DNA of 63,589 bases, counting the filler, from Octopus bimaculoides (taxonomy: Eukaryota), in NCBI RefSeq assembly GCF_001194135.2. It is 4 parts of 4 records of this genome, joined end to end, with 100 filler letters (N's around TTAATTAATTAA, not from the genome) between each part and the next. Parts side by side here need not be neighbours in the genome. Positions count along the whole stretch, not along the records: positions 1 to 28,330 come from NC_068981.1; 3 more parts are not named here. One strand, given 5' to 3'. This document shows, piece by piece, positions 8,478 to 28,502 of this stretch. Positions within the stretch are counted from its first letter, which is position 1, and every line of letters starts with the position of its first letter. The notes beneath the pieces are model-generated. The model ran no database searches. It saw nothing but the letters and a program-made list of their open reading frames with translations, and was not told where the DNA came from. The translations under genes were made by a program, and so were the position numbers.

Positions 8478-8582
8478 ATGTCATCAAACACAGATCAAAA
8501 GATAAAGAAACCCGATGAAGATGTGGTTTCAAAACCACAACCTCAAAACAATGATAAACTGAGCACTAGTCCAAAATCTCTT
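8478..8582 (+). CDS. Coding exon 1 ([35 protein letters not shown])
   Basis: Acceptor ttttcactctatag ends at 8464, ATG at 8478, donor GTAAGT at 8583; phase 0. Confidence 0.8.
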
Positions 8583-11500
8583 GTAAGTATGCTACTTAAA
8601 CAACTGAATATTATTTCATTAATATTAAAGTTGTCACATATTTATTTTTGCTAAGACAATAATAAAATACATATGGTAATTCTCAAATTTTGCAATGGAA
8701 GCAGCTCTAGATTAAAATATTAATTTATATGACATAATGTATGTATATTGCAAAGAAGCTGGAGCTACAGTGTTCATCTTCAAGAAAAATCTCTTTATAA
8801 CATATTGTGTTAAAACCACAATATACTTCAGGGCTAGATAAAACTAAATGAAGGGGGTCTGCCTCAAAAAGAACTATAACCTGGAAACAACTGCAAGAGT
8901 GACAGACATGCACTTCATCACTTTTGTAGCTTGTCGATGCCACACACTTGTCTCTTCCTACATGAAAACATCTCAGCCAGTCTGAAGTATGTAGAGTCAG
9001 TGAATAAACAATTCATTGGTTTTATAGAGATGATGCAAGGCTGAATAAAATTCAAATTTTGCAATAGAAGCATCTCTAGATTAGAATTTTTATTTATATG
9101 ATATACTTTAACGCACATATATATTTGGTCAAATCAGCATGGGAAACCATTAATCCAGATGAATATTTTTTTCTCTCTCCATTTTTTCCCCTCTCTCCAT
9201 TGCTTTCTCTCCTCATTCCTTTCTGTAAAGAGTACACAGTTGTGGCCAAAAGTTTGGAACATACAGAGGTTGGACAAAATAATGGAAACGCCTTAAAATT
9301 TCAAACAAATATATTTTAATATGGGTTAGGACCACCTTTGGCAGTAATTACAGCTTGAATTCTACGAGGTATGGACTCGTACAAAGTTTGAATTGTTTTC
9401 AAAGGAATTTTTGTCTATTCTTCAGCTAAAACAGTCTCCAGTTCTTGTAGCGATGATGGCGGAGGATATCGACTCCTTACTTGTTTTTCTAAAATGCACC
9501 ATAAATGTTNNNNNNNNNNAGTCTCCAGTTCTTGTAGCGATGATGGCGGAGGATATCGACTCCTTACTTGTTTTTCTAAAATGCACCATAAATGTTCGAT
9601 AATATTGAAATCTGGGGACTATGGTGGCCAGATAAGATGTTCAACTTCACTAGAATGTTCCTTGTGTCATTCAGTAACAACTTTAGCTGTGTGAATTGGT
9701 GTGTAGCGAGGCACAAAGAAGCCAGCACCATTTTGAAATAGCAAGATCTCGCCTGCAACCATTATTTAAGGAAAAGACAACAGCATTTTCCCTCTTGTTC
9801 TTCTCACGCTGACACCATGCAAGATTTTGAAGCCAGAAGCTCACAGTGGACTTTTGTCCTGCTGTGATGCCACATGTATTGTCTCTAGAGGTTATTGAAC
9901 CTCACGTGTATGGGAGAGAAGGCTAACTACACACTATTGTGAAGATGGTTACTGAAAGCAAACCCCTTGTATGAAGCACCTGTGAATAAACGGTTATAAT
10001 AAAAGGTGGAGTAGAATAAATTTACTCCACCTGAGAACTTCATTCTTTGTATTTCCAGCTACTTGAATAAACAGAATAATTATAATAAAGAAGAAGATAC
10101 CCCCAAAGTATCATAAAAACCATCTTTCCATTATAGGTGCATTTTCATCCTGAAAGATTGTATTTCACTCTGGAAACAGTTCCGCAACCATAGGATGAAT
10201 TTGATCAGATAAAATGCTTAAATAGCCTTGACTATTAATTCTACCATGAAGGGAAACCATTGGGCCAGCGGATTTCCAAGATATAGCACCCCAGATCATC
10301 ACAGATCCTCCTCCATGTTTAACAGTTGGAAGAAGGCAGTGGAAACTGGGTTCTCGAGGTGGTCCTTAAGCTCTTCAGTAATTTTGGGAGCTGTACTTTT
10401 GTGATCCTTTTTAACAATTCACATAAGAGTGTGATGGTCCCTATCTGAAAGTTTTGGTTTTCTTCTGGAGTTTTGTTTTGACGAGGAGGTTTTTCCCTCT
10501 TTCTCAAAGGCTGTCATTACTTTTGAGACAGTACTTCTTGATACACCAAATATTTTGGCTGTTTTTGTTATACTAGCACCTGCTATACGAGCACCAACAG
10601 TTTGACCTCTTTGAAAGTTTGGTAGATCTGTCATTTTAAGGAATTTTAATTACCTTTTTCTGATAATATCTGAAGAGAAACAGCAATTTTAGGAAAACAT
10701 ATTAAGCAACACTCATAATAAATCAAAAAACATAAAAATAAACAAGCTTTTGACAGTTTTATAGATATTTCAAAATTATGATGTTATGATACTAGGTGTT
10801 TCCATTATTTTGTCCAACCCCTGTAGGTTTGGAAATAAGAATTTTTATATTAAATGCCCAATATGTGCATTGTGTATATTTGAATCGAATTGTACTTGGG
10901 CATAACAATTTTGATTTTTAAAGAAATGTTCCAAACTTTTGGCCATGACTGTAGGCTTGAAACCTGAAAGATTCTTCCATTTTTTCCTGAGTATCAAAGT
11001 AATATACCTTATTTGTTGTTCCTTCACTTGTTTCTGTCTTCTGTTTTTTTTGTATTTTGTACAATTTTGAAATATAAACACACACACATACATACATTGT
11101 TTAAAAAAATATCTTTTCTCCTTTCTTATATTTGATACTAGTTGAAACAAATTGCCAAGATAAATGAAGTACTACCGCCAAGTCATCCAGATGATTCTCC
11201 AACAATCCATTTTGTACCCTTACAAACGGTAAGTTTTTCTCTGCTACTAATTTTAATAATACATTGAGAGGCTGGGGAGGAGGAGGAGAAGGTGCAGTGT
11301 TTATTGCCATTTAGGTCTTCATAGACTAGGGTAATAAGAAACTCCATTAGCATAACTAATTTCACTTCAGATCAGCACCAACAATTTTATCTTCCATGAT
11401 CCATTCTAATATACAGCTTGTAACTTATTTTGCAGCAAGAACCAAACTGTACTGTCTTCCTAGTTTCGGAATATGCCTCACTCAAATTAATCTCACTCGA

Positions 11501-14500
11501 AATGATGACTCACATTACATAAAACAAAGGCACATTATTGCAGTCAATTAAAAATTACACCATCATTCAACACTATTTTGCAAGTTCCTTTCTTTACTTT
11601 TTAGCATTGAGGTTACTTTGTCAAATGTAAAGCTTGTTTATGCACATTGCTTTGAATTAGTCATGCATTATCTTGTCACTTCGAGATTTTGATGATATGA
11701 TTGTTTATTTTTAAAATGACATTGTAGGGTAGATGTGAGAGACTGGATATAGCCAGCTTGAGCATAAAATGGGTAGAATATTTTGGCTGGATATGCTGGT
11801 TTAAATGCTAAAGGGTTAAAGAAATTAGTGCATTTATCATGCAATGCGTTTCTAATGAATATTTTAATAAATTCAAGGTTATGCTATTGTTCTATACATT
11901 TATTATTATTCTAAGTGCAGGTTAACATAATTAATGGAGTAAACAAAAAAGCATTTTTAATCAATTGAAATCATGCTGTAACGAGAAGAAAAGTTATTGG
12001 TGTTAATGATCATTCTTTTCAAAAGAAGCGAAGGGAAAGAAATGTGAAAGTCATTAGCATTAATGAAAGTTCATTTCAAAAGGGTCAAATCATGGGTATA
12101 ATACCACTTCATAAAAATTTGTTTTGGCTCACTATATTATGTTGGTCTGCATGTAATTCCATTATTCATGTAGAAGGCTCAAGAAATTTCTCTGTTTATA
12201 TTCCAGTCTCAGAAAGGATATTCTCGACGAAGTTCTGGAATACTTGCAACAGTAAATACACCCAAAACACTTATACAGAAGTTTCTATCTGAAGGTAAGT
12301 TCCCATTCTGTATTATTGTTTTCTTTCATATTTCCTCTCTAATTCATCATCATCATCATCATCGTTTAATGTCTGCTTTCCATGCTAGCATGGGTTGGAC
12401 GATTTAACTGAGGACTGGCAAGCCAGAAGGCTGCACCAGGCTCCAATCTGATCTGGCAGAGTTTCTACAGCTGGATGCCCTTCCTAACTCCAACCACTCC
12501 GAGAGTGTAGTGGGTGCTTTTACATGCCACCGGCACGAGGGCCAGTCACAAAGTACTGGCAACAGCCACGCTCAAAAGGTGTTTTTTACATGCCACCTGC
12601 ACAGGAGCCAGTCCAGCGGCACTGGCAACGACCTTGCTCGAATGATTTTCTAACGTGCCTAATTAATTGTAAATATATATATATATAAAAGTGAACAAAA
12701 GTTTATTAAATATCATATCACAGAAGATAAATTCTTGATTTATTGACATTATCTTCTCTTCCAAAGGAGAATGAACCAACACCATCTGATAATTGCAATC
12801 TACTTCAAATATAAAAAGCAAGATAATTTCTAAACAAATCAAAGCCTCTTTGAAACTAACATGCTGATGGTGTTTGTTGAAGGCAGAAACTTGTGTCCAC
12901 AGTTGTCCTCTTGTCTTCAGATAATCAGACTATCTTTTCCTTAATGACCTGGTCTCCTGAAAGTACCAAATAGATGAAGCTAGTATATTCAAATATCTGC
13001 ACACATGAAAACCTGCAAATGCATTTATGTATGCATCCATAATCTAGAATACCCTCATCCTAGAAACTTGGTGATTGTGATTGTAACCATTTAAAATTTT
13101 ATATAACTAACCTGAAGCATCCTAACAACTTTGATTGTTTCTTGTAGCTCCAACCGAAACTCCAGTAATACCATCCAATATGACAGGCAACAGTTCTTCA
13201 TTAGAAAAATCTTCTGTACCTTTACCTGCCAAAGTAATGGATTCTTACAATTACAGGTAATAATAAAATAATTATGTGATGGTATATGCATCAAGTGCAT
13301 GATGTATGTGTGATGCAAATGTAATATTTTTGGGTGTCTGTGTAGTTATACATGTCTGTATCTACTTTTAAAGATTAGCCTGAAGATGGGGTATTTGTCG
13401 AGATAGGACCTATGAACTTTGCAGGCTCTTCCAGAGCACTGAGATTGAAGCACTTTGTATATTGGTAATCCTATATTGGTAACTAAATCAAGGAGGTCTG
13501 CCTCAAAAAGGGCTAGATCTTTTATCCTGAGGGAGCCAGACTGCCATGATTTAGTTACCAATATTAGATTCCATAAGTACTATAGCCCCTTTCAAGCCAA
13601 ACTAAAATCTAACATTAGAAACTTTAGAAGCTCTAAAAAGAAGTTTGTAATTTCTCTTAAGACCAGAACCTGTATGAAGTCACTAATGATATTTATGATA
13701 AGTTTCTGAATGACACCATTTCCACTAAATATAAGACATTTACATAAACAGATGCAATGACATTAATGATGTGGCTAAATTCCTCTCTAAATGCATTAAA
13801 ATTGAAGATTGAGTAGAATGGAAGGTGTTTATAAGCCATTTAAGAAACACACAAAAACTGTTAGATTCACTTCAACATTTAAATTTAATTTGCCAAAATA
13901 TTTTCATCACTTTGAGACCGCGACCTGTTCACTGACAAATTTCCGTGCTGCATCTCTGCAAAATTCCATGCTGCATCTCTGTGTTTCTTGAATGGCTTAA
14001 AAACACCTGCCATGCTGCAATTGTTTTCGTTCCAGCACACGATCTCAGGTCAGGTCACTTGCTATGCAAGTACATCTCCGTAATTGATTAGAATGTTTAG
14101 CAAAAATGGAAGTTTTTATTTTTCTAAAAGCTCACAAACCTAATTTCAGTAATAAGTTCATTTGCAGATTGTTAAACCCAGCAAGGACTGAAATCAGGTT
14201 AGTAGCCAAAAAAAAAAAAAAAAAAAAAAAAAAATACTAAGGAACATTAATATCATAGCCAGAGAGACCAGTTAAGTCACACGAAGAAGAGAGGGAATGA
14301 TGATTAGCAATAGAGGGTGACACCCTTAAACTGAATATATTGAATATATTACATTAATGGAACTACAGTGATTTATTTTTTTATATTTACATATGATTTT
14401 GCGTGTCTATTTACATATTTCTGTGTTTTTTGCACACATCTAGATGCATATATGTATGTGTAGACAGAAGTTTCATGTATCTTATGTATGTGTGTAATTT

Positions 14501-17500
14501 ATACATGTGAACATAATTTGTGATTTTATGATTAAGGAGTTAGCTATTCTTTCATTTTATATGCAGTGTAAGTATATAGATTTGTATATGTACATGTTCA
14601 TGTTGTGTGTAATCTATTGTCTGATGTATATAGGTCTTTATATATCTGTGTGCATATGTGTAGAGTATCTGCTGTCCTGTATATATACAGGGTGCGATGG
14701 GTAAATTGTTGCCATTTTATATTTTAATTTTGCGCATCTGCATTGCTTGTTTCTAATTTTGTCAACTACGTAGTATAGTAGGGTCAGTTGGGCACCATAT
14801 GTGAGAAAATCAGCACCATGATGCAATTCACTCTACCAGAAATTTGGAAAGGACATGCTGTACTGCTTGGCATTTGTGTCAAAAGCTCCAATAGAAACAT
14901 TTCAGAGTGTTTGGGTGTCAATTTGAAGACAGTGCATGTACCAAGAGTGATAAAAATCAAACATCCAGTCAACATCATGGTGTTTGGAGTGATCATTAAT
15001 GATAGCAACATTATGCCTTCCTTCATCTTCCCACACGGCCGCAGACTCAACATGGAGGTTTACATCAAGTGCCTGGAGGAGGTAGTGCTGCCCTGGGTTG
15101 AGAGGGTGGCTGTTGGAAGACCCTATGTCTGGAAACAGGACTCTGCACCATGCCACACAAGCAGGAGAACCCAGTCATGGCTGACAGACAATTTTTGCGA
15201 CTACATCACCCCTAACATCTCGCCATATAACTCTCCAAACTGCAACCCCCTTGATTATTATGTATGGAGTGCAGTTGATTGAGGCTAACAAAACTCCTTG
15301 TAACACCAAAGATGAACTGAAGGCAAGGATTATTGCAGCATTCACCAACTTAAACAAGGAGGCCATCCAGAAGAGTTGTAGGAGATTCTGAAATTGTCTG
15401 AAGGTCGTGGTTGAAGCCAATGGCGATTTTATTGAATAAATTTACTCTTTAGTATTTCAAGATATTTTTATGTAATTTTGGTAAATATATCTGTTAAAAT
15501 GAGATGTCAGTGTTATTTTCATTCTTGCATAATTTAGCTGACAATATGTTCACCACACCCTGTATATATATAGTTTTGTACTTGTTTGTACAGTGTAATC
15601 TTTTTCTCTAATTTACTTTCTTCTTTGTTGATTCTTTTTATTATCCTCTACGCACCCCCTACAACATGACACATTCTTTCTCCATTAAATTCCTTTCTTG
15701 CCTTATCTTCCACTTCACCTCTGCAAGTGTACCTTATAGATCTAGTGTAGGGACAAACTTACAGCAAACATGTTTACAGCTAGCTCCTACATAAATCTGT
15801 TTCGAGTCATGCTGAGCCCAATATATTTCCGATCTACGAACTCTTTAGGCATATCTGAAGTTTTACTTTCATACAAAAGCCATAGAAAGTTCAATACATG
15901 GCAGTGTGCTTGCATATATGTTTCCTGACCAACAAACAGAATTTGCTTTTCTGCTTCCATGAATACATGGTTATCTGAAAGACGAGTTAGCATTAACAGC
16001 ATCAGCTAATGTATGTGAGAGATGGCTGTATGGGTATGAATGTATAAGAGAATGAAGGATGTGTGCAGAATAAAAGGCAGCCCATGTGTTGTTGGTGGAG
16101 GAAAACATTGGAAGTGGTGTAATCAAAACAGTAAACTTCAAAAACAAGAAATACTCAAAAACAGATGAATTGTTAAATGATGTAGAACAAACTTTTCTGC
16201 CCATACTAGCATGGAAAAATGGACATTGTGACATAGATTCCTGACAAATCTAAGTATAATAGGTAAAGCATTGAATTGCCAACATATTTTTCATGAATTC
16301 AGCTTTATTGCATATGGAAAATTTAATTCTGTGTACCTCAATTTGCTATGGCTGTGATGAATAGATTCCAGATTTTCAAGGAATGTCTCCTATGGTAAAC
16401 TGAGGTCATACTCAGAATAAGATACATTTCTCACTTTATTTCTTCTTATTGTTTATTGTTGTTTTTAGAGAAAAGGTACACAAAACGCAACTCTTAGCAA
16501 TAATTCCTTTTCCTGGCAGAGTTTATATCATGTTGAATTACTGATTTATTTATTTTATTTTTTTTTTTACGTATCAAAGTTAAGCAATATTGAACTTGCT
16601 ATTATTTAGTTGAATAATTATTTAGACAAACCCAGGTGATATTAACATCTTAATTCTAATTGAAATAAATGGTTGAGTGCATTTGGTATTGGACTACTTA
16701 TCATGAAGACTTGAGTTCAAATCTGCTAGAATATTTTCTTGTGTATTTAAGCATTATATTAAATATTATACACCTCAATTCACTTAGCTTGTCAGGAATA
16801 GATACCAGGTCACCTGGGAATGTTAAATGAAACAGACTGATGTCTTTTCCAAAGGGATATTTGTTTCTTATTGCTATATTCTTAAAACCTCATCAGAACT
16901 CATTTTATATTTAGTAGACAAGAATGCTAAAGTTTTTACTATTTGTAAATGACTTATCCATTGATAAAGAATCTAGAGTTAACTTCTGGTTCTAAATGTG
17001 CTTGTGTTTCAAAAGATATTTATCATTAAACAATATTATTTCATATTTTCAGAAAAATAGTTAATCTTTTTTTTTTTTATGTTTACTTTTATAACTCTTT
17101 TTCACTCCAGAGATCTTTCAGTAACTGCTAGTGACCTTGAAGAAGAGCCTGTATTGGGGAGTGAATCAATAACTTCAGAAGAAAAAGCTTCGAAACTTAA
17201 AGGTTTTTTTTTTTTTTTCCATCTGTCATTAACCTTACATCAATTTTTAGTTTCAGTTTTCATTTATTTTATAACAACTATATCGTATGAACATTTTTAT
17301 AAACAAATTTAAAAGTGCCAAGTGAGTTGGTATTTCGCAGAAAATAAAGTAAAGCTTGTACACAGTATAGCTGTGAAAACAGCTTAGAAGATTGGGTAAA
17401 TAATACCTTTAGAAGATAAAGCTACAGAGAGTCAAACCCTGTACCTCTCAGATATTGGATGTAATTACTGTTGGATTGTCTTGATTGTGGGTGTATGATC

Positions 17501-20500
17501 ATGTGTAGCATTCTGGTGTCACATTGAAAATGTCAAATGTGATGCCATACAGAAACATTAACTATAGGTACTAACTTTGTAAAATCAAAACATCTCAGAA
17601 ATGATGGGTTTTTTTAAAATAATAATTTGAGTGATTTCCTGGTACATTCCATGTCAGCATGGAACAGTCATGTTAAATGATGGTGATGAATTGCTGAGAA
17701 AGGGAAGCTTAATAATGTATGAATAGATTGTTAAATCTCATTTTATCTTATTGTTATGAAGATCTCTTCTTGTCTTCAGATTTGTAATTGTAATTACATC
17801 TTGTTCTCTTAATTCAGAATTCTTCATTCAGATCGTTAGTTATTGCAATTGTACATAGCATTAGTTATACAAATGTCATTTGCATCTAAACTGTAGAAGG
17901 ATTTTTAGGCTTGCCTATTCTTGTAGCATATAATTTCTAATAAGAAAATGTTTACTAGAATGTTCAGAGTTAAATTACTAAGTAAAAAGCTCAGTCATGT
18001 AACGGTTGTTACAGAACAGAAATTAACAATAGACAAAGAGATTAGTGTCTTTCTCACTTACAGTTCCTCATCTTCAAAATGAATGTAATCAAGGTTAATA
18101 CAATTCTTGTGATATGTGTTTCAGGATTGGCTGACAGATGCAGTCCTGTACACTACCTTGTCTGACAGGAAGTTAAGGGTTAAAAAAAAGATAAATGTTT
18201 TACGTTTCTAAATGCAATGAATATGTTATTACTCATTTATCTCAGTTTTGAGTGAAGCCCATACTTTTCATTTGAACCAGAGATGCTTTTTAGAAGTCAA
18301 CTCTGTTGCAAGTGACCAAATGTATTACATGATTGAAGGTCAATCTAGACTAGTGCACTGTTCTCTTTGTCAAAAGGTACCAGTGGAAAAGACTTCTAAA
18401 CAAAGGCTGAGAGCTGCTCTGTTATGTATTACATATTTCTTTTCTTGTGATTGCTGTCTTTCTTCAGCAGATATAGGGTCATTTCTGTTGAAGTAAGACA
18501 ACATAAGACTATGATGACCAATCTAAGGCCACTTTCACATTGACTAGTGCTGTAGTTAGCAACACTTTCACTTATAGATCTTTCTGCCATCTGATGCAGC
18601 TACTTTTCTCATCTATGTTAATCTATAAACTATCATTTGTAATAATAATTCATGAGGCTCAACTTGATCTGTAAACAGAAATGAAGAATTCACTTGTTTT
18701 AAAGGAAGTTTTGTTAAAATTTGATTAACTTAGGGTTTAAAAACTTAGATTTCAGAGGTAAACTAATGAGGAATAAATGAGAATGTGCTGCTATTACAAT
18801 CCATCCATCTCTGCCTCAAGTTTTGTAAAACTAATAAAATGTCTTCTTTGTTGTCAGATAGTCATGTAGGCTTTCAGAAAAATTCTTCAAAAGGGCTGAA
18901 GCGACCAAGAAGACAAATAACAGCAAAAGACATAGCAGATGGAGTGAAGCAATCACAAGGTAAGCTATGATTATTTTTAATTTCAACAAAGTAGTGTAAG
19001 GGAAAATACATCAGGGTAGCATTCTGCCCATCATCATCACCATTGTCATCATCGTTTTAGCAACAACTTTTCCATGCTTGCTTGATCGGACAAAGTTTGT
19101 TGAAGCGGATTTTCTAATGCCAGATGCTCTTCCTGTTTCCAAGTAAGATAATATTTCTTCATGGCCAGGCATGTTTTATGGAAGATTGGAAATGATTAAC
19201 ATTGTTTTAATGAAGGTTACACACATTTACAACCATCACATGACATCAAGATAAGGGTGTGTGTGCACACACACACACATGTATATATGAAGGGCTTCTT
19301 TCAGTTTCTGTGTACCAAATTTACTCTTAAGGCTGTTGTCAACCTGGAGCTACAGTAGAAAACACTTGCCCATGATGCTGTACAGTAGGACTGAACCTGA
19401 AAGTACATGGTTGGGAAGCAAGCTACTTAACCACACAGCCATGCCTACTAAATACAAATACAGTAGAGTGTCACATATGTAATACAAGGAGTTGAAAAAC
19501 TTTGGTCAACTGAACTTGTCCAAGTAATTAGTGGACAAAAACTCCCTCTTGAGATGTTTAAGATCTAAAAAAGGAAACAAGGGAAATAATTTACCTGCAA
19601 TAAGATCAGTTAAAGGAAATTTTTAGACAATAGATAATGCAAATTGAAATGGATCTGGTCATGTACTGAAAGCAATGGACTTGTTTAAGTCTTATATTTT
19701 CTTAACAAAGCATATTCTACTTAGTTGGCAACGCAAATAGTTCGTTCAGTCATTTTTATGTCCATTTTTCCATGTTAGTGTGGTGACAGTATAGAGAAGG
19801 GAAATATTCAATATACACAAGAAGAGTATTTTCTTTTCTATAATGGGAAGCATGGCACAGTGAGTAGAAGAAATGATGAGATGGGAGGGGATAGAATCAG
19901 CACAGTGGCCATGAGAATAGATAGTGAAGAGATGTGAGGGTATAGAATGGGCAATAGTATGTACAAAACAGTAGGCACACCTGCTCATACTAATGCAGTT
20001 TTCTCTCTTGTATACTACACCTAATTCTTCTTATACCCAGTTTGTCTCTCAGTTCATATATACTTTGTCATTTGTGCACACTAGTATGTTACATCCAACA
20101 AAGTTACTCACCTCATTTCTTTCCCGTCTTCCACACTCAAAGCCCACATCTCACTGATGTGAAGCAGCACACTTCACACATAAGCATCATACAGTGTGCC
20201 CTTAGCCTTGAGGAATAAACCCTAGGTTGCTAGCAGAAGAAATATCTTCCTGAACTTTTTTCCAGCCCGTTCTTATTCTAGCTATCACACTTTCAGAACA
20301 TCTTCCCTGACAGCTAATTTGATCACCTAGGTAACAAAAGCTGTTGACAACTTTTAGGGAATTGCTTGGATATTTGAGTGAAACTGTGTCTTGAGTGCTC
20401 TTAGTACTTACTGTTCCTGTTGCATATGAAACTTACCTTCTTTGTTGGCCTCTATATGTGTATGTGTGTGTGTGTGTGTGTGTGCATGCATGCAGGTGTA

Positions 20501-20879
20501 CTGTGTGGTTAGAAGTATACTTCTCAACCACATGGTTTTGGGTACAGTCCCATTATGTGGTACCTTGGGTAGGTGTCTTCTACTATAGCCCCAGTCTAAT
20601 CAAAGCCTTGTGAGTGGATTTGGTTGATGTGTGTGTCTGTGCACGTGTTATTTCTTTACTGCCCACAAGGGGCTACACACAGAGGGGACAAACAAGGACA
20701 GACAAACGGATTAAGTCGATTATATTGACCCCAGTGCGTAACTGGTACTTATTTAATCGACCCTGAAAGGATGAAAGGTAAAGTCAACCTCGGCGGAATT
20801 TGAACTCGGAACGTAGCGGCAGACGAAATACGGCTAAGCGTTTCGCCCGGCGTGCTAACGTTTCTGCCAGCTCACCGCC

Positions 20880-20920
<41 letters not shown>

Positions 20921-22443
20921 CGCACATGTTTATGTGTGAGTCACTGTCGTGCAAGAGGTGTCCTTCAATTCCTATGTTTCAAAACATGTTTGGTCATGGA
21001 AAAATATTACCTTCCTTGGAAACAGGTGAAGGTTGGAAACAGGAAGGGCATCCAGTTGTAGAAAATCTATCCAACCCATGTGAGCATGGAAAAGTGGTTA
21101 TTAAATGATGATGATGATAAGGGATTATTGTATATGTATATATAAAGGAGACCATTTCCTTTGAGAACAATTCGGTCTTAGTAGACACATTACATGTGAT
21201 CTTCTTCTAGCACATTAACAGTCCACCTAGTGGTCTCCTTTATATATATATATATATAATCACACACACACATTGAGTTGCCACACTGTTTCTGTCTAAC
21301 AAATTTTACTTAGACTGGCCATCTCAAGGTTGTGGTAGAAGATACTTGCCCAAGGTGTCAAACCAGGATCCATATGGTTGCAAAGCAAACTTCTTAACTA
21401 CACTGCCATATGGCTAAAACTATGTTATACCATAACCTTTCAACATTTCAAACTAGACATTAATCACTTCACCTGTTTATTACTATTCTCTAATATAAAA
21501 AGCTCTTAAAAAAAAAGAAAAAAGTTATAGCTACACTTCACATCTGAGATGCTTGCGTTTCAACTATGTCGGTATTGCAAAATAGACACGATAATACTGT
21601 AATTGATTTGATGTTTAAAATATTTTGTATTCAATCTTATTGTCAAAGGAATATTTGTTTTTACTAGATGCTGAAGAAGATGATGAAATTTCTCTTCACA
21701 AACCAAAAATAGTTATGAAAATTAGAAAGAAAATTACTGCAGATGATCTTGCAATGGGTATCAAACAATCACAAGGTAATTATTGACAGAAATCTTCATT
21801 GTATTGTAGTGAGTTTTGTAAGATGTATGTATTAATGGTGGAGGTGGGTGGCTTAGTGGTTTCGATTCTTGGACTGGGTGGCGTGTATTGCGTTATTAAG
21901 CAAAATGCTTCATTTCATGTTGCTTCAGTTTGCTCAGCTGGCGAAAATGAGTAATCCTGTAATGGACCAGTATCTCATTTGGGTGGGGAATATATATGCC
22001 ATGGAGACTACCCTATGTGTCTACATGACTCTTTTTATGTATTAATGAATTGTTTGGCGATTCTTAACAAGCTGGTCCCTGTTATTCAGCATAGCAGTTA
22101 TTTAACCGTTAGCAAACTGCATTTTCTCTAGAATTGTTTCCCCTGCCACTGCCCTGTTACTACAGGGGAGAAAAGTCATATGGTGACATGATGCTCCTAC
22201 ACTGTGTTAAAGGTTAAGGTCTTGAAAAATAAGCAGTTTTAAAATTATTATTATTATTATCTAGTTAATTTTATTTTATTATTTTATTCTTTTACTTGTT
22301 TCAGCTAGTGGACTGCAGTCATATTAGGTTACTACTTTGAAAGGTTTTAATTGATCAAATCATCCCTAGTATTCTATCAGTCTCTTTTTGCTGGATTGCT
22401 AATACACAGGGAATAAATAAACCAACAGTAGTTAAATGGTGAG

Positions 22444-22499
<56 letters not shown>

Positions 22500-25400
22500 A
22501 CGCACACGCACGCACACACACGCACACACACGCACGCACACACACACACACACACACACACAAATGTTAATGACAGGCTTCTATACAGTTTCCATCTATC
22601 AAATTCATTCGCCAGGCACTGGGCAACTCAAGACTATAGTACAAGACACTTGCTCAATATGCCACATAGTGGAATTGAACCTAAAACCATGTGGTTGCAA
22701 AGTAAACTTCTTAACTGCATGGTCATGTGTGCATCTGTATTTATATTGATCTATAGCACAGAAGTTTTATAGATTGTACTGCAAATTTAAATGATTTTGT
22801 GTAATTGTTGCTAAGGAGGTGATGAAAAACTAATAATAAAAGGTTTGAATCTTTGCTGGAGAAGGCATGTCCAAGAAACATGGAAAAACTGGCTTATACT
22901 GATGATGCTTCTCATAAAGTATTTAACAACTCATACTTGAGTCATGAGTAGTTTTAGAATGAAACATCTACATAGAAAAAGAGATAATCCAGCAGTATGC
23001 ATGGAACCAAATTTGAAAACACACCCTACCCTTTCTAGCATGGAAAATAGCTGTTAAATTGTTTTTATAGTATTTTTGCCATTCTTTTCTAATCTTAGCA
23101 TTCTTTTATATGCAAGGTATCTATTATTCATATATATTCTAATTTCTTTTTTCTGTTTTGGTTCTGACTTTAGAAGCTGCCGCAGCTACTGAGGCAAAAC
23201 CTACTGATATAACAGAAATGTCAACAAGTGACTCATCACTTGGATTTTTGACAGTGAATTCTGAAAATACTGAACATTTTCTGGATACCACAAATGTAGC
23301 AGTTGAAGATAGCTCAGATGAATCAGATTTGTCTGAGGATTGTTCCAACCATGGAAACAAGCAATCAAAATCAGATGCAGTACAATCAGAGAAAAACCCT
23401 CCGAATTCAAGTGAGAGAGAAAAAACATGGAAAATTGATGATGTTAATCGAATGTGTTTGGAAGAAAGTTTAAAAGTATTGCGAGATGCAAGCGATAAAC
23501 ATGCATCAAAAGAAAAGTTACAATATAAACCTGAGAAACCTAATAATTCTGTGATTTCTCAACCAAGAAAAAGTACCAGTTTGACTGAGACAATACCAAG
23601 CTTCCAGCTGAGCCAACGCACAACAAAAGATTTAACAAACCTTTCAGACTCAGAAAACTCAGTTAAACATACTTCTCATGTCAATTTGGCTAACTCTTCT
23701 TCTTCACTCAGCTTTCTTAAGAAACTTACTGTGAGCCTTACTGATATCAGCTGTAGTGGAAACCAGCAATCTATGACCGCATCAACTAAAAACTTCCTAA
23801 ATTCTACTAAAAATATTAAAAGTAGGGATGATGCAGCATTAAGTGATAATAAAGGGAAAGAAAAAGACAGGTTCATCATCAGAGAAAACAAGGAGATTTC
23901 AGATTCACCATCTTCTTCTGATTCTGAATTTAAGACCTCCAGAAAAATCACTTATGATAAAGACATTAAATCTAAGCAGGATGCTGCTGTTATCTCTAGC
24001 AATAGGAATTCTGACTGCGAGGATATTACTGAAGAAAAACCATCTGAGTTAAAAGAGGTAACACCTGATATAGGATCTTTGAAATTAAAAGAGAAATCTA
24101 CAAATTGTGAAGAAACCAAAATCGGACAAAGTGATGTGGCAACTGATAAAGACACTTTCGTTGAAGATCTTGCAGAAATGCCATTGGAAACTAAAGATGT
24201 AGAATATACAAGTGAATTCATTCAGACATTTTCCTTGGAAAGTTTAAATGAAGAGACTGTTTCTTCAAATGTGAGTCAGAATAAAACGGATGAAAAAATT
24301 GAAGTGAGAAGCAAAAATGAAATGGTAGCCCATACACAGGAAAAGCAAAATATAGCAGACCAGCATGAGAGCAAGACCAATTATGGTAGAATGCTAGAGG
24401 GACAGATGGAACTGAATGAAGAACCTGTCAAAGATTTTGTTCCTGTAAACAATGTTGTTTTAGAGCTACATGAAGAGATGGTTGTAATTGAGGATGAAAA
24501 TGAAGTGATTGAAGTACAAGATGAACCAATTGTTGAAATACTTGATGAAGAATATATAAGATTACATAATGAAGATCTCATAGGTATCAATCGGGAGGCA
24601 GCATTTGTGTATCAAACAGAAAATAAAGATACGAAAAACCTACAAAAGGAAAATCAAATGACATTAAATGAAGACATTGAAAAGAAACACGATCAGCATG
24701 CAGAAAAAATTCCAGTAGATGTGCAAGATGACAAAATGAAACCTGAGAGAGAAACTAGAAAAGAAAAAGAACTAAGTAGTAATGTGGAAGAAATAGTAGT
24801 AACAGGTATAGATGAAGCAAGAAGGAAATCAGGGGTGGGTAAGAATAATGAAAATGTATTACAAGATAAAGTTGATGTGACTACAGATGAAAAGGAAATC
24901 AGTGTAACAAAGAGCAAAGTAGAGGTTAGTACAGCACAAGATGAAGAAGAGGACATTCCACTGTTTGAAGTTGAAAGCTTGTCAGAAGATGAAATCAGTG
25001 AAATTGATAGGAGCACGAAAGGGGAAAACAGGAGTGTCAGTCAGAGTGAAGGTGGAGAAGAAGACATTCCACTGTTTGAAGTTGAAAGCTTGTCACAAGT
25101 TGAAATCAGTAAAGTTTCAGGTGAAGTTGACGAGAGTGCAAAAGGGGAAAACGCAAGTGTCCACCAGTGTGAAAGTGACACTAGCATGCCCCATGTTAAA
25201 ACTGACATTGAGTTAAGCCTAGATAAGAGTGAGACTAAGTCATTTCAGAATGAAGATGATATTGGCAAAATACAAGACAAAAGTGAGGACAATATGGCCC
25301 AAAATAAAACTGAAATTGATATGATTCTGGTTGAAAGCAAGGCTGATGGAAAACAGAGCAACAAAACAGGTGTAACTCAGGATGAAAGTGAAATCTATTT

Positions 25401-26983
25401 CATCCAAAATGAAAGAAAAACAGGCATGACCCAAAATGAAGGTGGTGTAACTCAAGATAAAAGCAAGGATTCTGTGATTCAAGATGAAAGCAAGGCTTGG
25501 GTGACCCAGGAAGAAAGCGAAGCTGGCAAGACCCAAGATGAAAGTGAGGCTGATGTGGCCCAAGAAAAAAGTGAGACTGGTGTGCCCCAGGATGGAAGTG
25601 AAGCTGATGCACTCCAGAGTGAGAATGTGGATGGTGAATCCCAAATAGAAAGCAAGGATTATGTGTCAGAAATAGAAAGCAAGGACTCTACATCCGAAGC
25701 TGAAAGTGAAGTTGCTGTAACCCAGCACAAGCACAATCTTAGTGGAATTCAAGAAGAATTTGAGACTGGTGCAATTCAGAATGACAGCAAGATAAGCGTC
25801 ACCCAAGATAGAAGCAAGTCTAGCATGATACAGCATGAAGTTGATGTGATACCAGAAGAAAGTGAAGCTGGTGAGACCCAAGAAGAAAGCAAAGCTGGTG
25901 AAATCCAGGAAGAAAGAAAGGTTGGTGAGACTCGGGAAGAAAGTGAGAATAGTGAATCCCAGGAAGAAAGCGAAGATGGTGAAACCCAGGGAGAAAGTGA
26001 GGCTGGTGAGACCCAGGAAGAAAGTGAGGCTGGTGAGACCCAAGAAGAAAGTGAGGCTGGTAAGACCCAGGATGAAAGTGAGGCTGGTAAGACCCAGGAT
26101 GAAAGTGAGACTGGTAAGACCCAGGATGAAAGTGAGGCTGGTAAGACCCAGGATGAAAGTGAGGCTGGTGAGACCCAGGATGAAATTGAGGCTGGTAAGA
26201 CCCAGGATGAAAGTGAAGCTGGTGAATCTCAAGAAGAAAATGAAGCTGGTAAGACCCAGGAAGGAAACAAGACAGCCACAAAACTGGATAAGCCTGACTT
26301 ATATGAGATCATGGCTGGCCAGGTAAAATATTTGACTCTAACCAGAGATAGAAAGAGAAGTGAGGTCCAATGTCCAGCCAATGTAATGCAAGATGAAGAC
26401 ATGCCTGCTACAACTAATGATTTTGATTTTCTTAATGAAATCAAAAATGATGACAGAGAAGAACAAGAATTTAATATCAAAGTAAAATCTGTAAGCAAGA
26501 ATAAAAGTACTTCTAGGGTAAAAGAACTGGCTGAAAATGAAATACAAGTAGATGATGAAGCTATCTTTCAGCAAAACATTGAACACTCAAAGAAGTATTA
26601 CTTAAGAGGTAAAGAGAGCCAAACAACTCCTTCCTGCTCTTCCTTGCAACAAAGATCTTCTGTTGCTAATCCATCAGTCTCTCCAAAGCCTTCAAAGTCT
26701 CAAGATCTTAGCTTAAAACGTAGAGGAACAAAACGAAAATCTGCTAGTGACCATACAACAGAGGCTGAACAAGTATCAGCTCATTCAGTTTCAGAGAAAC
26801 TAAGACGACGAAGCAGAGAGACAAATTTAAGTAAAACCAGATCATATAGAATTGTAGACTCTTTGAGTGGAATTGGAGACTCTTTGACAATCAGTAATCA
26901 AGCTATAAAGCAGCTTCCCCCGGATATTGGGACAGTTCCAAATGAAAATCAACGTTTGCAGAAGACAGATCAACAAATATCAG
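8478..26983 (+). CDS. CENPT: Multi-exon gene, 3'-incomplete, at least 1500 codons; tentative CENP-T-like inner kinetochore protein
   Basis: Eight exons with canonical AG/GT ends join in frame (intron phases 0,0,1,2,1,1,1, then phase 1 after exon 8): 8478-8582, 11142-11228, 12207-12294, 13148-13256, 17111-17202, 18858-18959, 21668-21775, 23174-26983, total 4501 nt. The spliced N-terminus contains STSPKSL|LKQIA and [13 protein letters not shown]|APTETPVIP. These align by eye with human CENP-T STPRTLLRRVL and QTPRTLLKNILLTAPESSILMP (recalled). An acidic middle and basic distal region also fit. The histone fold is not seen, so the name rests on motifs only. Confidence 0.6.
9264..10823 (-). mobile_element. 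Decayed Tc1-family transposon, catalytic spacing D-36-E (Incomer-like)
   Basis: TIRs CAG(A/G)GGTTGGACAAAATAATGGAAAC with TA on both sides. HTH start [39 protein letters not shown] (10419-10634), [25 protein letters not shown]...[14 protein letters not shown]. Stops, frameshift and internal deletion present. Confidence 0.9.
9702..10135. mobile_element. 434-bp insertion with 4-bp TSD (GGTG), solo-LTR-like
   Basis: Interrupts the Tc1 transposase inside NAP|IH. GGTG at 9698-9701 and 10136-10139; starts TGT, ends ATA (not CA); internal AATAAA at 9985. Confidence 0.6.
11142..11228 (+). CDS. Coding exon 2 ([29 protein letters not shown])
   Basis: Polypyrimidine tract + tag acceptor ending 11141, donor GTAAGT at 11229; 87 nt, phase 0/0; completes the SPKSLLKQI motif. 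Confidence 0.8.
11597..11815. mobile_element. piggyBac-like MITE (TTAA-flanked, ...TTTAGCATT TIR)
   Basis: Right end aatgctaaaggg|TTAA, decayed left end tttttagcatt; homologous to 27802-28004. Confidence 0.6.
12207..12294 (+). CDS. Coding exon 3 ([29 protein letters not shown])
   Basis: Acceptor ttccag ending 12206, donor AG|GTAAGT at 12295; phase 0/1. Confidence 0.85.
12345..12658 (-). mobile_element. SINE/short retroposon with (GAT)n tail (family B)
   Basis: Reverse complement of the 27215-27635 element; also fragmentary at about 19025-19160 and 21020-21120. Confidence 0.8.
13148..13256 (+). CDS. Coding exon 4 ([37 protein letters not shown])
   Basis: Acceptor ttcttgtag ending 13147, donor AG|GTAATA at 13257; phase 1/2, open frame. 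Confidence 0.8.
13473..13564. repeat. 92-nt hairpin: 28-bp inverted arms, 36-nt loop
   Basis: ATATTGGTAACTAAATCA (13473-13490) is exactly complementary to 13547-13564; the arms extend to 28 bp with 3 mismatches. Confidence 0.8.
14688..15562 (+). mobile_element. Internally deleted DD37D (maT/Bmmar1-like) mariner element
   Basis: TA|CAGGGTG...CACCCTG|TA ends; ORF 14788-15282 has [10 protein letters not shown]...[12 protein letters not shown] with 37 residues between the last two D (counted by hand). Confidence 0.85.
17111..17202 (+). CDS. Coding exon 5 ([31 protein letters not shown])
   Basis: Long T tract + ccag acceptor ending 17110, donor AG|GTTTTT (weaker) at 17203; phase 2/1. Confidence 0.7.
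18858..18959 (+). CDS. Coding exon 6 ([34 protein letters not shown])
   Basis: Acceptor ttgtcag ending 18857, donor AG|GTAAGC at 18960; 102 nt, phase 1/1. Confidence 0.8.
19289..19446 (-). mobile_element. SINE family A
   Basis: Diverged reverse complement of 6511-6669. Confidence 0.75.
20648..20881 (-). mobile_element. tRNA-derived SINE (family C), full length
   Basis: Minus strand aaggcggtgagctggcagaa...gagttcaaattccgccgaggttgactttacctttcatcc...; homologues at 50305-50745 and 62112-62539. Confidence 0.8.
21668..21775 (+). CDS. Coding exon 7 ([36 protein letters not shown])
   Basis: Acceptor tttttactag ending 21667, donor AG|GTAATT at 21776; 108 nt, phase 1/1; 3' half is paralogous to exon 6. 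Confidence 0.8.
23174..26983 (+). CDS. Giant coding exon 8 (3810 nt, 1270 codons), E/D/S/K-rich, probably intrinsically disordered
   Basis: Lies in the 1307-aa ORF 23158-27081. Acceptor ctgactttag ends at 23173 in the phase expected from exon 7. Probable donor AG|GTTGGA at 26984, after which the ORF turns intron-like (FCFFFKLAF). The 3' boundary is less certain. Confidence 0.85.
24946..25170 (+). repeat. Two-copy coding duplication ([16 protein letters not shown]...S.KGEN.SV), 111-bp offset
   Basis: GACATTCCACTGTTTGAAGTTGAAAGCTTGTCA at 24952 and 25063. Confidence 0.9.
25849..26265 (+). repeat. Coding 27-bp tandem repeat, 15 units + partial, consensus TQ(D/E)ESEAG(K/E)
   Basis: Units such as GAAAGTGAGGCTGGTAAGACCCAGGAT are directly visible; more degenerate 9-aa units extend upstream to about 25220. 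Confidence 0.95.
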
Positions 26984-27214
26984 GTTGGACATTGTTTTGT
27001 TTTTTTTTTAAACTTGCTTTTGAATGTTTATATACTGGACCCATCTTGATTTGGTATTACTCATTCATTCATCTAAGCTGAAAATGATAGGTGCCAATTC
27101 ATTTTCAAGAATTGCAAGTCAAAGAACTTGACTGTTAAAAGATTGGAAGTCCACTTTGACATACCCATTTCCATCAAGTCATATTAGGATGTTGAGAGGG
27201 ATCTGTTGTTTCAG

Positions 27215-27635
27215 TTACTCATTTTCGAGCGAGATCGTTGTCAGTGCCCCTGGACTGGCTCTTGTGCGGGTGGCACATAAAATACACCATTTTGAGTGTG
27301 GCCGTTGCCAGTACCGCCTGACTGACCTTCATAGGATTTTCGAGCGAGATCGTTGCCAGTGCCCCTGGACTGGCTCCTATGCGGGTGGCACATAAAATAC
27401 ACCATTTTGAGCGTGGCCGTCGCCAATACCGCCTGACTGGCCTTCGTGCGGGTGACACGTAAAAGCACCCACTACACTCTCTGAGTGGTTGGCATTAGGA
27501 AGGGCATCCAGCTGTAGAAACTCTGCCAAATCAGATTGGAGGCTGGTGTTGCCATCCGGTTTCACCAGTCCTCAGTCAAATCGTCCAACCCATGCTAGCA
27601 TGGAAAGTGGATGTTAAATGATGATGATGATGATG
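27215..27635 (+). mobile_element. SINE/short retroposon (family B) with an internal 115-bp tandem duplication
   Basis: attttcgagcgagatcgttg... at 27221 and 27336; ends catgctagcatggaaagtggatgttaa(atg)n. Confidence 0.8.
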
Positions 27636-28004: not shown

Positions 28005-28043
28005 TTAAGGCTCCTGCAACTATCCTATTCTGATGTTTTAGAA

Positions 28044-28430: not shown

Positions 28431-28502
<72 letters not shown>

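What the first reader, a model, noticed from the sequence alone, without database searches (positions are those of the whole stretch)
8478..26983. Unusually large CENP-T-like kinetochore protein (at least 1500 aa before any histone fold)
Seen: eight exons splice in frame to 4501 nt, and the N-terminus carries two S/T-P-K-S/T-L-L/I helices. Known: vertebrate CENP-T (561 aa in human) uses CDK-site-containing TPRTLL motifs to bind Spc24/25 of Ndc80, links through a disordered region, and ends in a histone fold that pairs with CENP-W. Inferred: this is an orthologue whose linker is roughly three times longer, mostly from one 3.8-kb exon, which would lengthen the tether between centromeric chromatin and the outer kinetochore.
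Basis: partly seen in the sequence, partly recalled or inferred. Interest (0 to 1): 0.72.

Follow-up and report, generated by a model that had tools for sequence, protein, structure and literature searches.

The report
Octopus CENP-T gene, long acidic linker
This is the Octopus bimaculoides gene for the kinetochore protein CENP-T, which has an unusually long acidic linker; public databases misname and truncate it because an assembly gap hides one tiny exon.

Summary
Eight GT-AG exons (8478-26983, + strand) splice to exactly 4501 nt. They encode the first 1500 residues of the Octopus bimaculoides RefSeq model XP_052826670.1.

The interpretation also holds. The histone-fold exons lie 8-18 kb downstream on the same chromosome and strand, outside the window. 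Spliced together, they pass the Pfam CENP-T_C cut-off, and their best solved-structure matches are chicken and human CENP-T. An AlphaFold model of the 91%-identical O. vulgaris domain matches CENP-T chains.

The N-terminus carries two (S/T)PK(S/T)L(L/I) motifs. They align by profile to the human Thr11 and Thr85 NDC80-binding sites.

The 10-N gap at 9510-9519 lies in intron 1, inside a transposon fossil, and does not affect the coding sequence.

The public O. bimaculoides models lack the histone fold and are named "CAP-Gly linker protein 1". The cause is a 30-nt microexon that falls in a 4.5-kb assembly gap starting at the window's edge.

At about 1650 aa the protein is roughly twice the family median (about 800 aa) and three times human CENP-T. 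It is not unique: newt CENP-T reaches 1617 aa. The idea of a longer tether is untested.

This is an ordinary orthologue, and the result is mainly a useful annotation fix.

The parts
8478..8582 (+). Exon 1 (ATG at 8478; 105 nt, phase 0). Its last codons encode S-P-K-S-L of Ndc80-binding-type motif 1.
   Evidence: Donor is GTAAGT at 8583.
11142..11228 (+). Exon 2 (87 nt). It completes motif 1 (LKQIAKINE, predicted helix 32-44).
12207..12294 (+). Exon 3 (88 nt). It contains the RRSS patch and motif 2, [10 protein letters not shown] (12258-12287, predicted helix 83-93).
13148..13256 (+). Exon 4 (109 nt).
17111..17202 (+). Exon 5 (92 nt), an acidic stretch ([13 protein letters not shown]) conserved in Argonauta.
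18858..18959 (+). Exon 6 (102 nt). It carries MIS12-type motif 1, [19 protein letters not shown] (about 18890-18946).
21668..21775 (+). Exon 7 (108 nt), a paralogue of exon 6. It carries MIS12-type motif 2, [13 protein letters not shown] (about 21724-21762).
23174..26983 (+). Exon 8 (3810 nt, 1270 codons), the acidic, mostly poorly conserved linker (net charge -137). It holds a few conserved islands, including [12 protein letters not shown] and [11 protein letters not shown] near its 3' end. The donor GT is at 26984. Public models wrongly read on into the intron from here.
25855..26263 (+). A 27-nt tandem repeat of about 15 copies inside exon 8, encoding (E/D)ESEAG(E/K)TQ units. It is the source of the long spurious ORFs in other frames and on the minus strand.
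9433..9596 (.). Assembly gap (9510-9519) flanked by exact 77-nt duplicates. It lies in intron 1, inside a minus-strand Tc1-like transposase fossil, and has no effect on the CDS.
26984..28330 (+). The start of intron 8. It contains two tandem 110-nt SINE-like copies (27221-27445) and ends at a 4541-N assembly gap in the genome itself. That gap should hold microexon 9a.

Best explanation
The region holds the first eight exons of the single-copy Octopus bimaculoides orthologue of CENP-T, a protein of the inner kinetochore (CCAN). The full gene continues beyond the window. A 30-nt microexon (9a) is lost in an assembly gap. Four further exons (9b, 10, 11, 12) lie at G000:C1 131843833-131853746 and encode a basic stretch and then the CENP-T histone fold with its two-helix extension. 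The predicted protein has about 1650 residues.

The mechanism below is inferred from the vertebrate protein. The C-terminal histone fold pairs with CENP-W and anchors the protein in centromeric chromatin and the CCAN. Two N-terminal (S/T)-P-K-x-L-(L/I) helices, each preceded by a CDK-type S/T-P site, each recruit one Ndc80 complex through Spc24/Spc25. Two basic-I-T-A-x-D-(I/L)-A-x-G-(V/I) motifs, in exons 6 and 7, are candidates for recruiting the Mis12 complex. Between the two ends lies a disordered, strongly acidic linker of about 1300 residues, encoded by exon 8. The linker evolves fast, partly by expansion of a 9-residue repeat, and acts as a flexible tether.
For: Gene model: the eight exons give exactly 4501 nt, all introns are GT-AG, and the product equals P0002 residues 1-1500.

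Orthologues: O. vulgaris (1648 aa), O. sinensis (1541 aa) and Argonauta (1488 aa, partial) continue into a C-terminal domain that matches or nearly matches Pfam CENP-T_C.

Downstream exons of this genome: they lie on the same contig and strand, were the only three matches reported in the genome, and are intact with canonical splice sites.

Histone fold:
- The spliced product scores 32.1 bits against CENP-T_C; the cut-off is 28.1.
- The best solved-structure matches are chicken CENP-T (3vh5_T, E 4e-9) and human CENP-T (7qoo_T, E 1.8e-4). The alignment runs through the two-helix extension, and no other histone-fold protein matched at E<=10.
- The AlphaFold2 model of the 91%-identical O. vulgaris domain has pLDDT 83 and five helices.
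- The top eight Foldseek hits are all CENP-T chains, with target-normalised TM-scores of 0.70-0.88 and rmsd about 1.8-2.2 A. The next hits are H3, at E>=0.027.

Family search: a search with the histone-fold domain alone, against 1.84 billion representative proteins, gave 84 hits. All have the domain at the extreme C-terminus. Those looked up include proteins named 'centromere protein T' from newt, snake and skate.

N-terminal motifs:
- The TP[RK]xL[IL] motif occurs in 55 of 69 of these homologues, against 0.26 expected in shuffled sequences.
- An N-terminal profile that includes the octopus sequence hits only human CENP-T residues 8-111 in the PDB (E 4.7e-5). It aligns both motifs to the Thr11 and Thr85 sites, which are the experimentally defined SPC24:SPC25-binding sites (PMC5241120).

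MIS12-type motifs: they are present in at least 22 of 69 homologues, against 1 or fewer expected. They resemble the human sequences RKQRLRLSVFQQGV and GLARRPPARRAVDVGAFL; the latter includes Arg209 (PMC11189301).

Partner: an Spc25 RWD exon is present in the genome.
Against: No transcript from O. bimaculoides itself was examined. Exon 9a is absent from the assembly. Without it, exon 8 (which ends in phase 1) and exon 9b (which starts in phase 0) do not join in frame, so continuity rests on three relatives. No Pfam N-terminal model matched. CENP-W and Spc24 were not detected by exon-wise Pfam search; both are short, split by introns and fast-evolving, so these results are inconclusive. In O. 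vulgaris and O. sinensis the CENP-T_C score is only just above the cut-off (28.2 and 28.4 bits). The alignment used for the structure model contained vertebrate CENP-T sequences, so the model is not fully independent evidence. All binding functions are inferred from sequence.
Confidence: 0.93

Rival explanations
1. The database names are right: the gene encodes a CAP-Gly linker protein (CLIP1-like) or a RAD50-like coiled-coil protein.
For: NCBI names XP_052826670.1 'CAP-Gly domain-containing linker protein 1' and the O. sinensis orthologue 'DNA repair protein RAD50-like'.
Against: No Pfam family of any kind matched the 1532-aa model at E<=1, so there is no CAP_GLY, Rad50 or SMC domain. The names most likely come from compositional similarity of the long E/K/Q-rich region. 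Both ends of the protein match CENP-T specifically.
Confidence: 0.01
2. In O. bimaculoides the locus is broken. Either the eight exons make a stand-alone acidic protein and the histone-fold exons form a separate small gene, or the gene is a truncated pseudogene.
For: Both public O. bimaculoides models stop after exon 8 with intron-derived tails. Exon 8 (phase 1) cannot join exon 9b (phase 0) directly. dN/dS over the histone-fold exons is 0.88, although only about 26 substitutions were counted.
Against: The missing 30-nt exon 9a lies, in O. sinensis, in the stretch with no assembled counterpart in O. bimaculoides. That stretch corresponds to positions 28044-32871 here, of which 28331-32871 is the 4541-N gap. 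All four downstream exons are open, keep GT-AG sites, and are 91% identical in the fold to O. vulgaris. O. vulgaris, O. sinensis and Argonauta gene models join both ends in one protein. So does an 894-aa protein encoded on 3.2-3.3-kb contigs assembled from sequencing runs, which are probably transcripts. The histone-fold search reported only these three exons in the genome.
Confidence: 0.04
3. The long exon 8 is largely a gene-prediction artefact: non-coding repeat sequence that happens to be open.
For: It contains a 27-nt tandem repeat that is open in several frames on both strands. It has no Pfam domain and dN/dS of 0.62.
Against: The frame is open for 1312 codons, of which only about 135 are the repeat. 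It is kept open in O. vulgaris and Argonauta, with indels in multiples of three. It contains islands conserved to Argonauta and to the 894-aa relative: [35 protein letters not shown] and [11 protein letters not shown]. dN/dS is below 1 over 1229 codons.
Confidence: 0.02

Closest known systems
Vertebrate CENP-T (human, 561 aa, PDB 7QOO chain T; chicken histone fold, PDB 3B0C/3VH5)
   Same: The order of parts is the same: two TP(R/K)xL(L/I) Ndc80-binding motifs, then MIS12-type basic motifs, then a disordered linker, then a C-terminal histone fold with a two-helix extension. The fold matches by sequence (E 4e-9) and by predicted structure (target-normalised TM-score 0.70-0.88).
   Different: It is about three times longer than the human protein. 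Lys replaces Arg in the motifs (SPK/TPK instead of TPR). The linker is strongly acidic (net charge -137) with a 9-residue tandem repeat. No Pfam N-terminal model matches. The human Thr195/Ser201-type phosphosites could not be identified.
Large CENP-T proteins of other animals: Pleurodeles waltl (1614-1617 aa), Ahaetulla prasina (1198 aa), Amblyraja radiata (1057-1177 aa), Mytilus galloprovincialis (about 1041 aa)
   Same: These also have long linkers built from lineage-specific tandem repeats between conserved ends. This shows that linker expansion recurs in the family.
   Different: The repeat units are unrelated in sequence and length. The octopus repeat is a short acidic 9-mer, and most of the extra length in octopus is non-repetitive.
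The 894-aa cephalopod-like homologue P0006 (encoded on 3.2-3.3-kb contigs assembled from sequencing runs; species not given)
   Same: It has the same two N-terminal motifs, one clear MIS12-type motif, the SYR(I/M)(V/I)DS island, and a histone fold that is 50% identical.
   Different: It is about 750 residues shorter in the linker. The large expansion is therefore seen only in the octopods examined (Octopus, Argonauta).
Lepidopteran CENP-T (Bombyx mori; bioRxiv 10.1101/836262)
   Same: It was identified by the same criterion used here: a histone fold plus the CENP-T-specific two-helix extension.
   Different: The octopus protein keeps clear Ndc80-type N-terminal motifs, and its homology is much easier to establish.

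Membership tests
CENP-T (CCAN histone-fold kinetochore protein) | C-terminal histone fold matching Pfam CENP-T_C (PF15511) above the gathering score | tested here: met
   The spliced O. bimaculoides exons 9b-12 (outside the window) score 32.1 bits; the cut-off is 28.1. The orthologues score 28.2 and 28.4 bits.
CENP-T (CCAN histone-fold kinetochore protein) | Two-helix extension after the histone fold (alpha4-alpha5), which separates CENP-T from other histone-fold proteins | tested here: met
   The alignment to chicken CENP-T runs to residue 103 of 111, through ...LIREHLSLVDQQKLIPVARA. The AlphaFold2 model has five helices. The top eight Foldseek hits are all CENP-T chains, and the next hits are H3 at E>=0.027.
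CENP-T (CCAN histone-fold kinetochore protein) | Closest relatives in solved structures and in a global protein search are CENP-T, not another histone-fold family | tested here: met
   PDB phmmer found only CENP-T chains at E<0.01. The histone-fold search found 84 proteins, all with a C-terminal fold. Of ten looked up, three clusters carry the name 'centromere protein T' (newt, snake, skate); the rest are uncharacterized or unnamed.
CENP-T (CCAN histone-fold kinetochore protein) | N-terminal Spc24/Spc25-binding motif(s) with a CDK S/T-P site | tested here: met
   This was tested at sequence level only. SPKSLLKQIA is at residue 31 and [10 protein letters not shown] at 82. The motif is present in 55 of 69 homologues, against 0.26 in shuffles. 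The N-terminal profile hits human CENP-T 8-111 at E 4.7e-5 and aligns to Thr11 and Thr85. Helices are predicted at 32-44 and 83-93. Binding was not tested.
CENP-T (CCAN histone-fold kinetochore protein) | MIS12-complex-binding region downstream of the Ndc80 motifs | tested here: inconclusive
   The motifs [19 protein letters not shown] and [13 protein letters not shown] resemble motifs found in at least 22 of 69 homologues and in the human 153-166 and 206-223 regions. The regular expressions were designed after seeing the sequences, and no equivalent of the Thr195/Ser201 phosphosites was identified.
CENP-T (CCAN histone-fold kinetochore protein) | Match to a curated N-terminal CENP-T profile in Pfam (auxiliary, not defining) | tested here: not met
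   No Pfam family matched residues 1-280 at E<=10. The region is short linear motifs within disorder, so this does not weigh against membership.
CENP-T (CCAN histone-fold kinetochore protein) | Histone-fold partner CENP-W encoded in the same genome | tested here: inconclusive
   The best exon-wise hit to PF15510 scored 20.9 bits (E 0.78), below the cut-off of 25, and its translation was not convincing.
CENP-T (CCAN histone-fold kinetochore protein) | One transcript joins the N-terminal motifs to the histone fold in this species | tested here: inconclusive
   This holds in the O. vulgaris, O. sinensis and Argonauta gene models and in the probably transcript-derived P0006. In O. bimaculoides, microexon 9a lies in a 4541-N gap.
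CENP-T (CCAN histone-fold kinetochore protein) | Constitutive centromere localisation and recruitment of the outer kinetochore | not testable with these tools
   This needs cell biology.
CLIP1 / CAP-Gly linker proteins (the NCBI name) | CAP-Gly domain(s) | tested here: not met
   No Pfam family matched P0002 at E<=1.
RAD50 (the NCBI name of the O. sinensis orthologue) | Rad50/SMC ATPase head and zinc hook | tested here: not met
   Only CENP-T_C matched P0004.

The most novel reading that the evidence does not exclude
The octopod-specific doubling of the CENP-T linker may be functional rather than neutral drift. The linker has about 1300 residues and net charge about -137, and it grows partly by a 9-residue acidic repeat. 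It might set a longer or more compliant chromatin-to-microtubule tether, or act as a polyanionic platform, for example for phase separation or histone/chaperone binding. If so, the independent giant CENP-Ts of octopods and the newt would reflect kinetochore architecture scaling with centromere or chromosome size.
Probability: 0.1. Interest if true: 0.55.

Novelty: new member of a known kind. Interest (0 to 1): 0.25.

Why it matters
The practical gain is a corrected annotation. The reference octopus genome carries its CENP-T gene under a wrong name and without the domain that defines it, and the cause is now pinned to one microexon in one assembly gap. That matters for inventories of kinetochore genes, in which CENP-T is often scored as lost.

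Biologically, the result shows that octopods keep the canonical CENP-T pathway. The two Ndc80-binding motifs align to the human Thr11 and Thr85 sites, MIS12-type motifs are present, and the histone fold carries its extension.

It also adds a clear case to a pattern visible in the homologues. The CENP-T ends are conserved while the linker changes length several-fold through lineage-specific repeats. If linker length affects kinetochore mechanics, octopus and newt are natural extremes to test. Nothing here shows that it does.

Tried and rejected
- **Pfam on the N-terminal part.** Scanning the 1312-aa ORF, the 1532-aa model and the first 280 residues found nothing. Searching the PDB with the N-terminus as a single sequence also found nothing. 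Only a profile of N-termini reached human CENP-T.
- **A possible exon 9a inside the window.** A tblastn hit at 28292-28324 (SLKYLESTIKK against SSKILESTRPK) has no acceptor site and no DNA similarity to the O. sinensis exon. It was rejected as chance.
- **Looking for exon 9a elsewhere in the assembly.** The first query hit only a high-copy repeat of about 77 bp. A repeat-free query hit nothing.
- **Partner genes.** CENP-W (PF15510) and Spc24 (PF08286) were sought exon by exon and not found convincingly. Spc25 was found.
- **dN/dS by region.** Exon 8 gave 0.62 over 1229 codons. The small N-terminal and histone-fold exons have too few substitutions (about 21-26) to contrast with it. My first attempt failed because the O. 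sinensis assembly has a frameshift inside exon 8.
- **Transposon ORFs in introns.** Pfam found only HTH domains for the Tc1-like fossil and nothing for the mariner-like ORF.
- **Literature.** No paper in the library mentions both CENP-T and octopus.
Full report
**What the window is.** The window is Octopus bimaculoides, G000:C1:131808467-131836852, + strand. It is AT-rich (about 36% GC) and full of repeats. It contains three internal N runs, and a further N run follows the piece at 28331.

**Checking the observation.** A stop-to-stop scan shows one outstanding open frame, 23143-27081 on the + strand, of 1312 codons. The annotated O. bimaculoides protein P0002 (XP_052826670.1, 1532 aa) was recovered by homology search and mapped back with tblastn.

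Reading the junctions gave eight exons:
- exon 1: 8478-8582
- exon 2: 11142-11228
- exon 3: 12207-12294
- exon 4: 13148-13256
- exon 5: 17111-17202
- exon 6: 18858-18959
- exon 7: 21668-21775
- exon 8: 23174-26983

All introns are GT...AG. The exons total 4501 nt, and their translation is identical to P0002 residues 1-1500.

**The flagged gap.** The gap at 9510-9519 was tested first, as asked. It lies in intron 1, between two exact 77-nt copies (9433-9509 and 9520-9596). These sit inside a minus-strand Tc1-like transposase fossil. It is an unmerged assembly overlap. The exon 1/2 junction peptide (SPKSL|LKQIAK) is contiguous in the O. vulgaris and O. sinensis models and in the related 894-aa protein P0006. 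No coding sequence is affected.

**Where the histone fold is.** P0002 does not stop at the exon 8 donor (GT at 26984). It reads on into the intron for 32 spurious residues. The older UniProt model A0A0L8I7C1 instead splices into a SINE-like repeat at about 27340-27460. Neither has any Pfam domain.

The orthologues in O. vulgaris (1648 aa; UniRef name 'Centromere protein T') and O. sinensis (1541 aa) continue after ...KTDQQIS into about 150 more residues that match Pfam CENP-T_C. So does the partial Argonauta hians protein (1488 aa), although its match (25.5 bits) falls just below the cut-off.

Searching the O. vulgaris tail against the window's own genome found three exons on the same contig and strand, 13.5-18 kb past exon 8. 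They were the only matches in the genome. After fetching that DNA, I defined four exons, all with canonical splice sites:
- exon 9b: C1:131843833-131843867
- exon 10: C1:131848989-131849102
- exon 11: C1:131850834-131850938
- exon 12: C1:131853572-131853746

**Why the public models are truncated.** Exon 8 ends in phase 1 and exon 9b begins in phase 0, so a piece is missing between them. In O. sinensis (locus L006) that piece is a 30-nt microexon encoding AESSKILEST, 1.2 kb after exon 8.

Aligning the two species' introns shows where it went. O. sinensis 25300-26086 matches window 26861-28043. O. sinensis 26987 onward matches the sequence immediately after a 4541-N gap, which begins at window position 28331. 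The 900 bp between, including the microexon, has no counterpart. That stretch is also found nowhere else in the assembly. The truncated and misnamed public models are therefore an assembly-gap artefact. The predicted full protein has about 1652 residues.

**Is it CENP-T? The C-terminus.**
- The spliced 142-residue tail scores 32.1 bits on Pfam CENP-T_C, against a cut-off of 28.1.
- Its best solved-structure relatives are chicken CENP-T (3vh5_T, E 4e-9; 3b0c_T) and human CENP-T (7qoo_T, E 1.8e-4). The alignment runs through the CENP-T-specific two-helix extension. This is the criterion used to recognise insect CENP-T (bioRxiv 10.1101/836262).
- An AlphaFold2 model of the O. vulgaris domain, which is 91% identical in the fold, has mean pLDDT 83 and five helices.
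- Its eight best Foldseek matches are all CENP-T chains, with target-normalised TM-scores of 0.70-0.88 and rmsd about 1.8-2.2 A. Histone H3 follows at E>=0.027.
- A profile of the family hits CENP-T in the PDB at 1e-50, and other histone folds at 1e-9 to 1e-11.
- A search with the fold alone, against 1.84 billion representative proteins, gave 84 hits, all with the fold at the extreme C-terminus. Those looked up include 'centromere protein T' of newt, snake and skate, and uncharacterised proteins of mussel and whelk.

**Is it CENP-T? The N-terminus.**
- The two motifs, SPKSLLKQIA (residue 31) and [10 protein letters not shown] (residue 82), fit TP[RK]xL[IL]xx[hydrophobic]2. That pattern occurs in the first ~200 residues of 55 of 69 homologues that were found through the C-terminus alone. 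Shuffled sequences give 0.26.
- In a multiple alignment, both octopus motifs fall in register with those of distant animals. Pro83 is invariant.
- A profile of these N-termini hits a single PDB protein significantly: human CENP-T residues 8-111 (E 4.7e-5). It places the motifs on Thr11 and Thr85. These are the two sites whose CDK1 phosphorylation lets human CENP-T bind two SPC24:SPC25 units (PMC5241120).
- AlphaFold2 predicts exactly two helices in residues 1-125, at 32-44 and 83-93, with local pLDDT of 76-86.

Exons 6 and 7 are paralogous. Each encodes a basic-I-T-A-x-D-(I/L)-A-x-G-(V/I)-K-Q-S-Q motif: [23 protein letters not shown] in exon 6 and [19 protein letters not shown] in exon 7.

Similar motifs sit at the equivalent position in at least 22 of 69 homologues, against 1 or fewer in shuffles. 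The human sequence, exposed by an alignment to a PDB chain, has RKQRLRLSVFQQGV (153-166) and GLARRPPARRAVDVGAFL (206-223). The second lies in the region needed for MIS12C binding and contains Arg209 (PMC5241120; PMC11189301). I regard these as probable MIS12-complex-binding motifs. The patterns were written after seeing the sequences, so this is a lead and not proof. Argonauta has five copies.

**The linker.**
- Composition: exon 8 encodes 1270 residues with 23% Asp+Glu, 20% Ser+Thr and net charge -137. It matches no Pfam domain.
- Repeat: a 27-nt unit is repeated about 15 times at 25855-26263, with weaker copies from 25450. It encodes (E/D)ESEAG(E/K)TQ. It explains the long open frames in other frames and on the minus strand.
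- Conservation: identity to O. vulgaris is 84% in exon 8 and 90-94% in the N-terminal 230 residues. Identity to Argonauta is 32% in the linker and 77% in the fold. dN/dS against O. sinensis is 0.62 over 1229 codons.
- Conserved islands: [17 protein letters not shown], [24 protein letters not shown] (possibly a nuclear localisation signal) and [11 protein letters not shown] just before the fold. Their functions are unknown. The last may correspond to the CCAN-contacting segment of vertebrate CENP-T, but that is only inference.

**How large is 'unusually large'?** Among the 85 family representatives the median length is 765 aa. Ignoring fragments under 400 aa, it is 809 aa. The longest are 1648 (O. 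vulgaris), 1614 (the newt Pleurodeles waltl, whose isoforms reach 1617), 1541 (O. sinensis), 1488 (Argonauta, partial), 1198 (snake) and 1097 (skate).

The octopus protein is therefore about three times the human one (561 aa) and about twice the typical length. It sits at the top of the known range but has a vertebrate equal. The nearest non-octopod relative found, P0006, has 894 aa, so the expansion appears to be octopod-specific. The long homologues that I read also owe their length to unrelated lineage-specific tandem repeats. Linker expansion is thus a recurrent habit of this family.

**How it most likely works.** The gene structure, both conserved ends and the disordered acidic middle are shown here. 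The rest is inferred from vertebrate work. The fold, with CENP-W, anchors the protein in the CCAN and centromeric chromatin. CDK phosphorylation of Ser31 and Thr82 lets each helix bind one Ndc80 complex. The exon 6/7 motifs recruit Mis12 complexes. The linker is a flexible tether.

In chicken, the 80-500 middle region is flexible, stretches under tension, and could extend to about 130 nm (PMC3082190). By simple proportion, about 1300 residues could reach about 400 nm fully extended. As a random coil, the end-to-end distance would be only about 1.8 times larger. Whether this changes kinetochore geometry is untested.

**Verdict.** The finding is a correct identification of an ordinary, conserved kinetochore gene with an extreme but not unprecedented linker. 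It also explains why the reference annotation misses the defining domain. Interest is modest.

Noticed in passing
window 28331 onward (G000:C1:131836797-131841337): The window's edge is a real 4541-N assembly gap in the chromosome. By synteny with O. sinensis it should hold a 30-nt CENP-T microexon (AESSKILEST). Its absence explains why both public O. bimaculoides models (XP_052826670.1 and A0A0L8I7C1) are truncated with spurious tails and misnamed.
   Followed up: yes
window 7418-7571, next to the N run 6820-7417: A perfect 154-nt palindrome (two 77-nt arms, 100% complementary, no spacer) abuts an assembly gap. It is most likely a fold-back or chimeric-read assembly artefact. The same peptide therefore appears in ORFs on both strands.
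   Followed up: partly
window about 9283-10650 (minus strand), intron 1: A degenerate Tc1-like transposon lies here. Its HTH domain matches Pfam HTH_28 and HTH_23, and fragments of the DDE region are readable. The 10-N gap and its 77-nt duplicated flanks lie inside it.
   Followed up: partly
window 14782-15388 (+), intron 4: An ORF of 166 aa, followed by 68 aa in a shifted frame, has mariner-like transposase C-terminal residues (...[11 protein letters not shown]...[13 protein letters not shown]...). No Pfam hit was found at E<=0.01.
   Followed up: partly
window 27221-27445: Two tandem 110-nt copies (94% identical) of a SINE-like element lie in intron 8. The older UniProt gene model ends by reading into them. 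Related 'FVEADF.QLDA.P'-encoding repeat fragments occur at about 8352-8400, 12440-12480 and 19090-19140. A separate 77-bp element in the O. sinensis intron has at least 40 near-identical copies across the O. bimaculoides genome.
   Followed up: partly
L006 (O. sinensis CM016859.1) about 23994-24009: The O. sinensis assembly changes reading frame inside exon 8. This is probably why its RefSeq protein (1541 aa) lacks about 107 residues that O. vulgaris has, and why the locus does not translate to the deposited protein.
   Followed up: partly
P0005 (Argonauta hians), residues 72-322: Argonauta CENP-T carries five copies of the MIS12-type motif, arranged as repeated modules that also duplicate the TEMSxSxxSLGFLxVNSEN island. 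Octopus has two copies and P0006 has one clear copy. The copy number of this module varies within cephalopods.
   Followed up: partly
window 20430-20900 and 22440-22570: (CA)n/(TG)n microsatellites lie in introns 6 and 7. They produce long His/Thr or Cys/Val pseudo-ORFs.
   Followed up: no
window 25666-26326, both strands: Several ORFs of 140-210 aa in other frames and on the minus strand overlap the 27-nt repeat of exon 8. They are by-products of the periodic, stop-free repeat and are not genes.
   Followed up: yes
window 7471-7857 (+): A 128-aa open frame ends in a C2H2-type zinc finger (Pfam zf-met, 18.9 bits, below the cut-off). It is possibly the tail of a retrotransposon ORF, about 600 bp upstream of the CENP-T start codon.
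   Followed up: no
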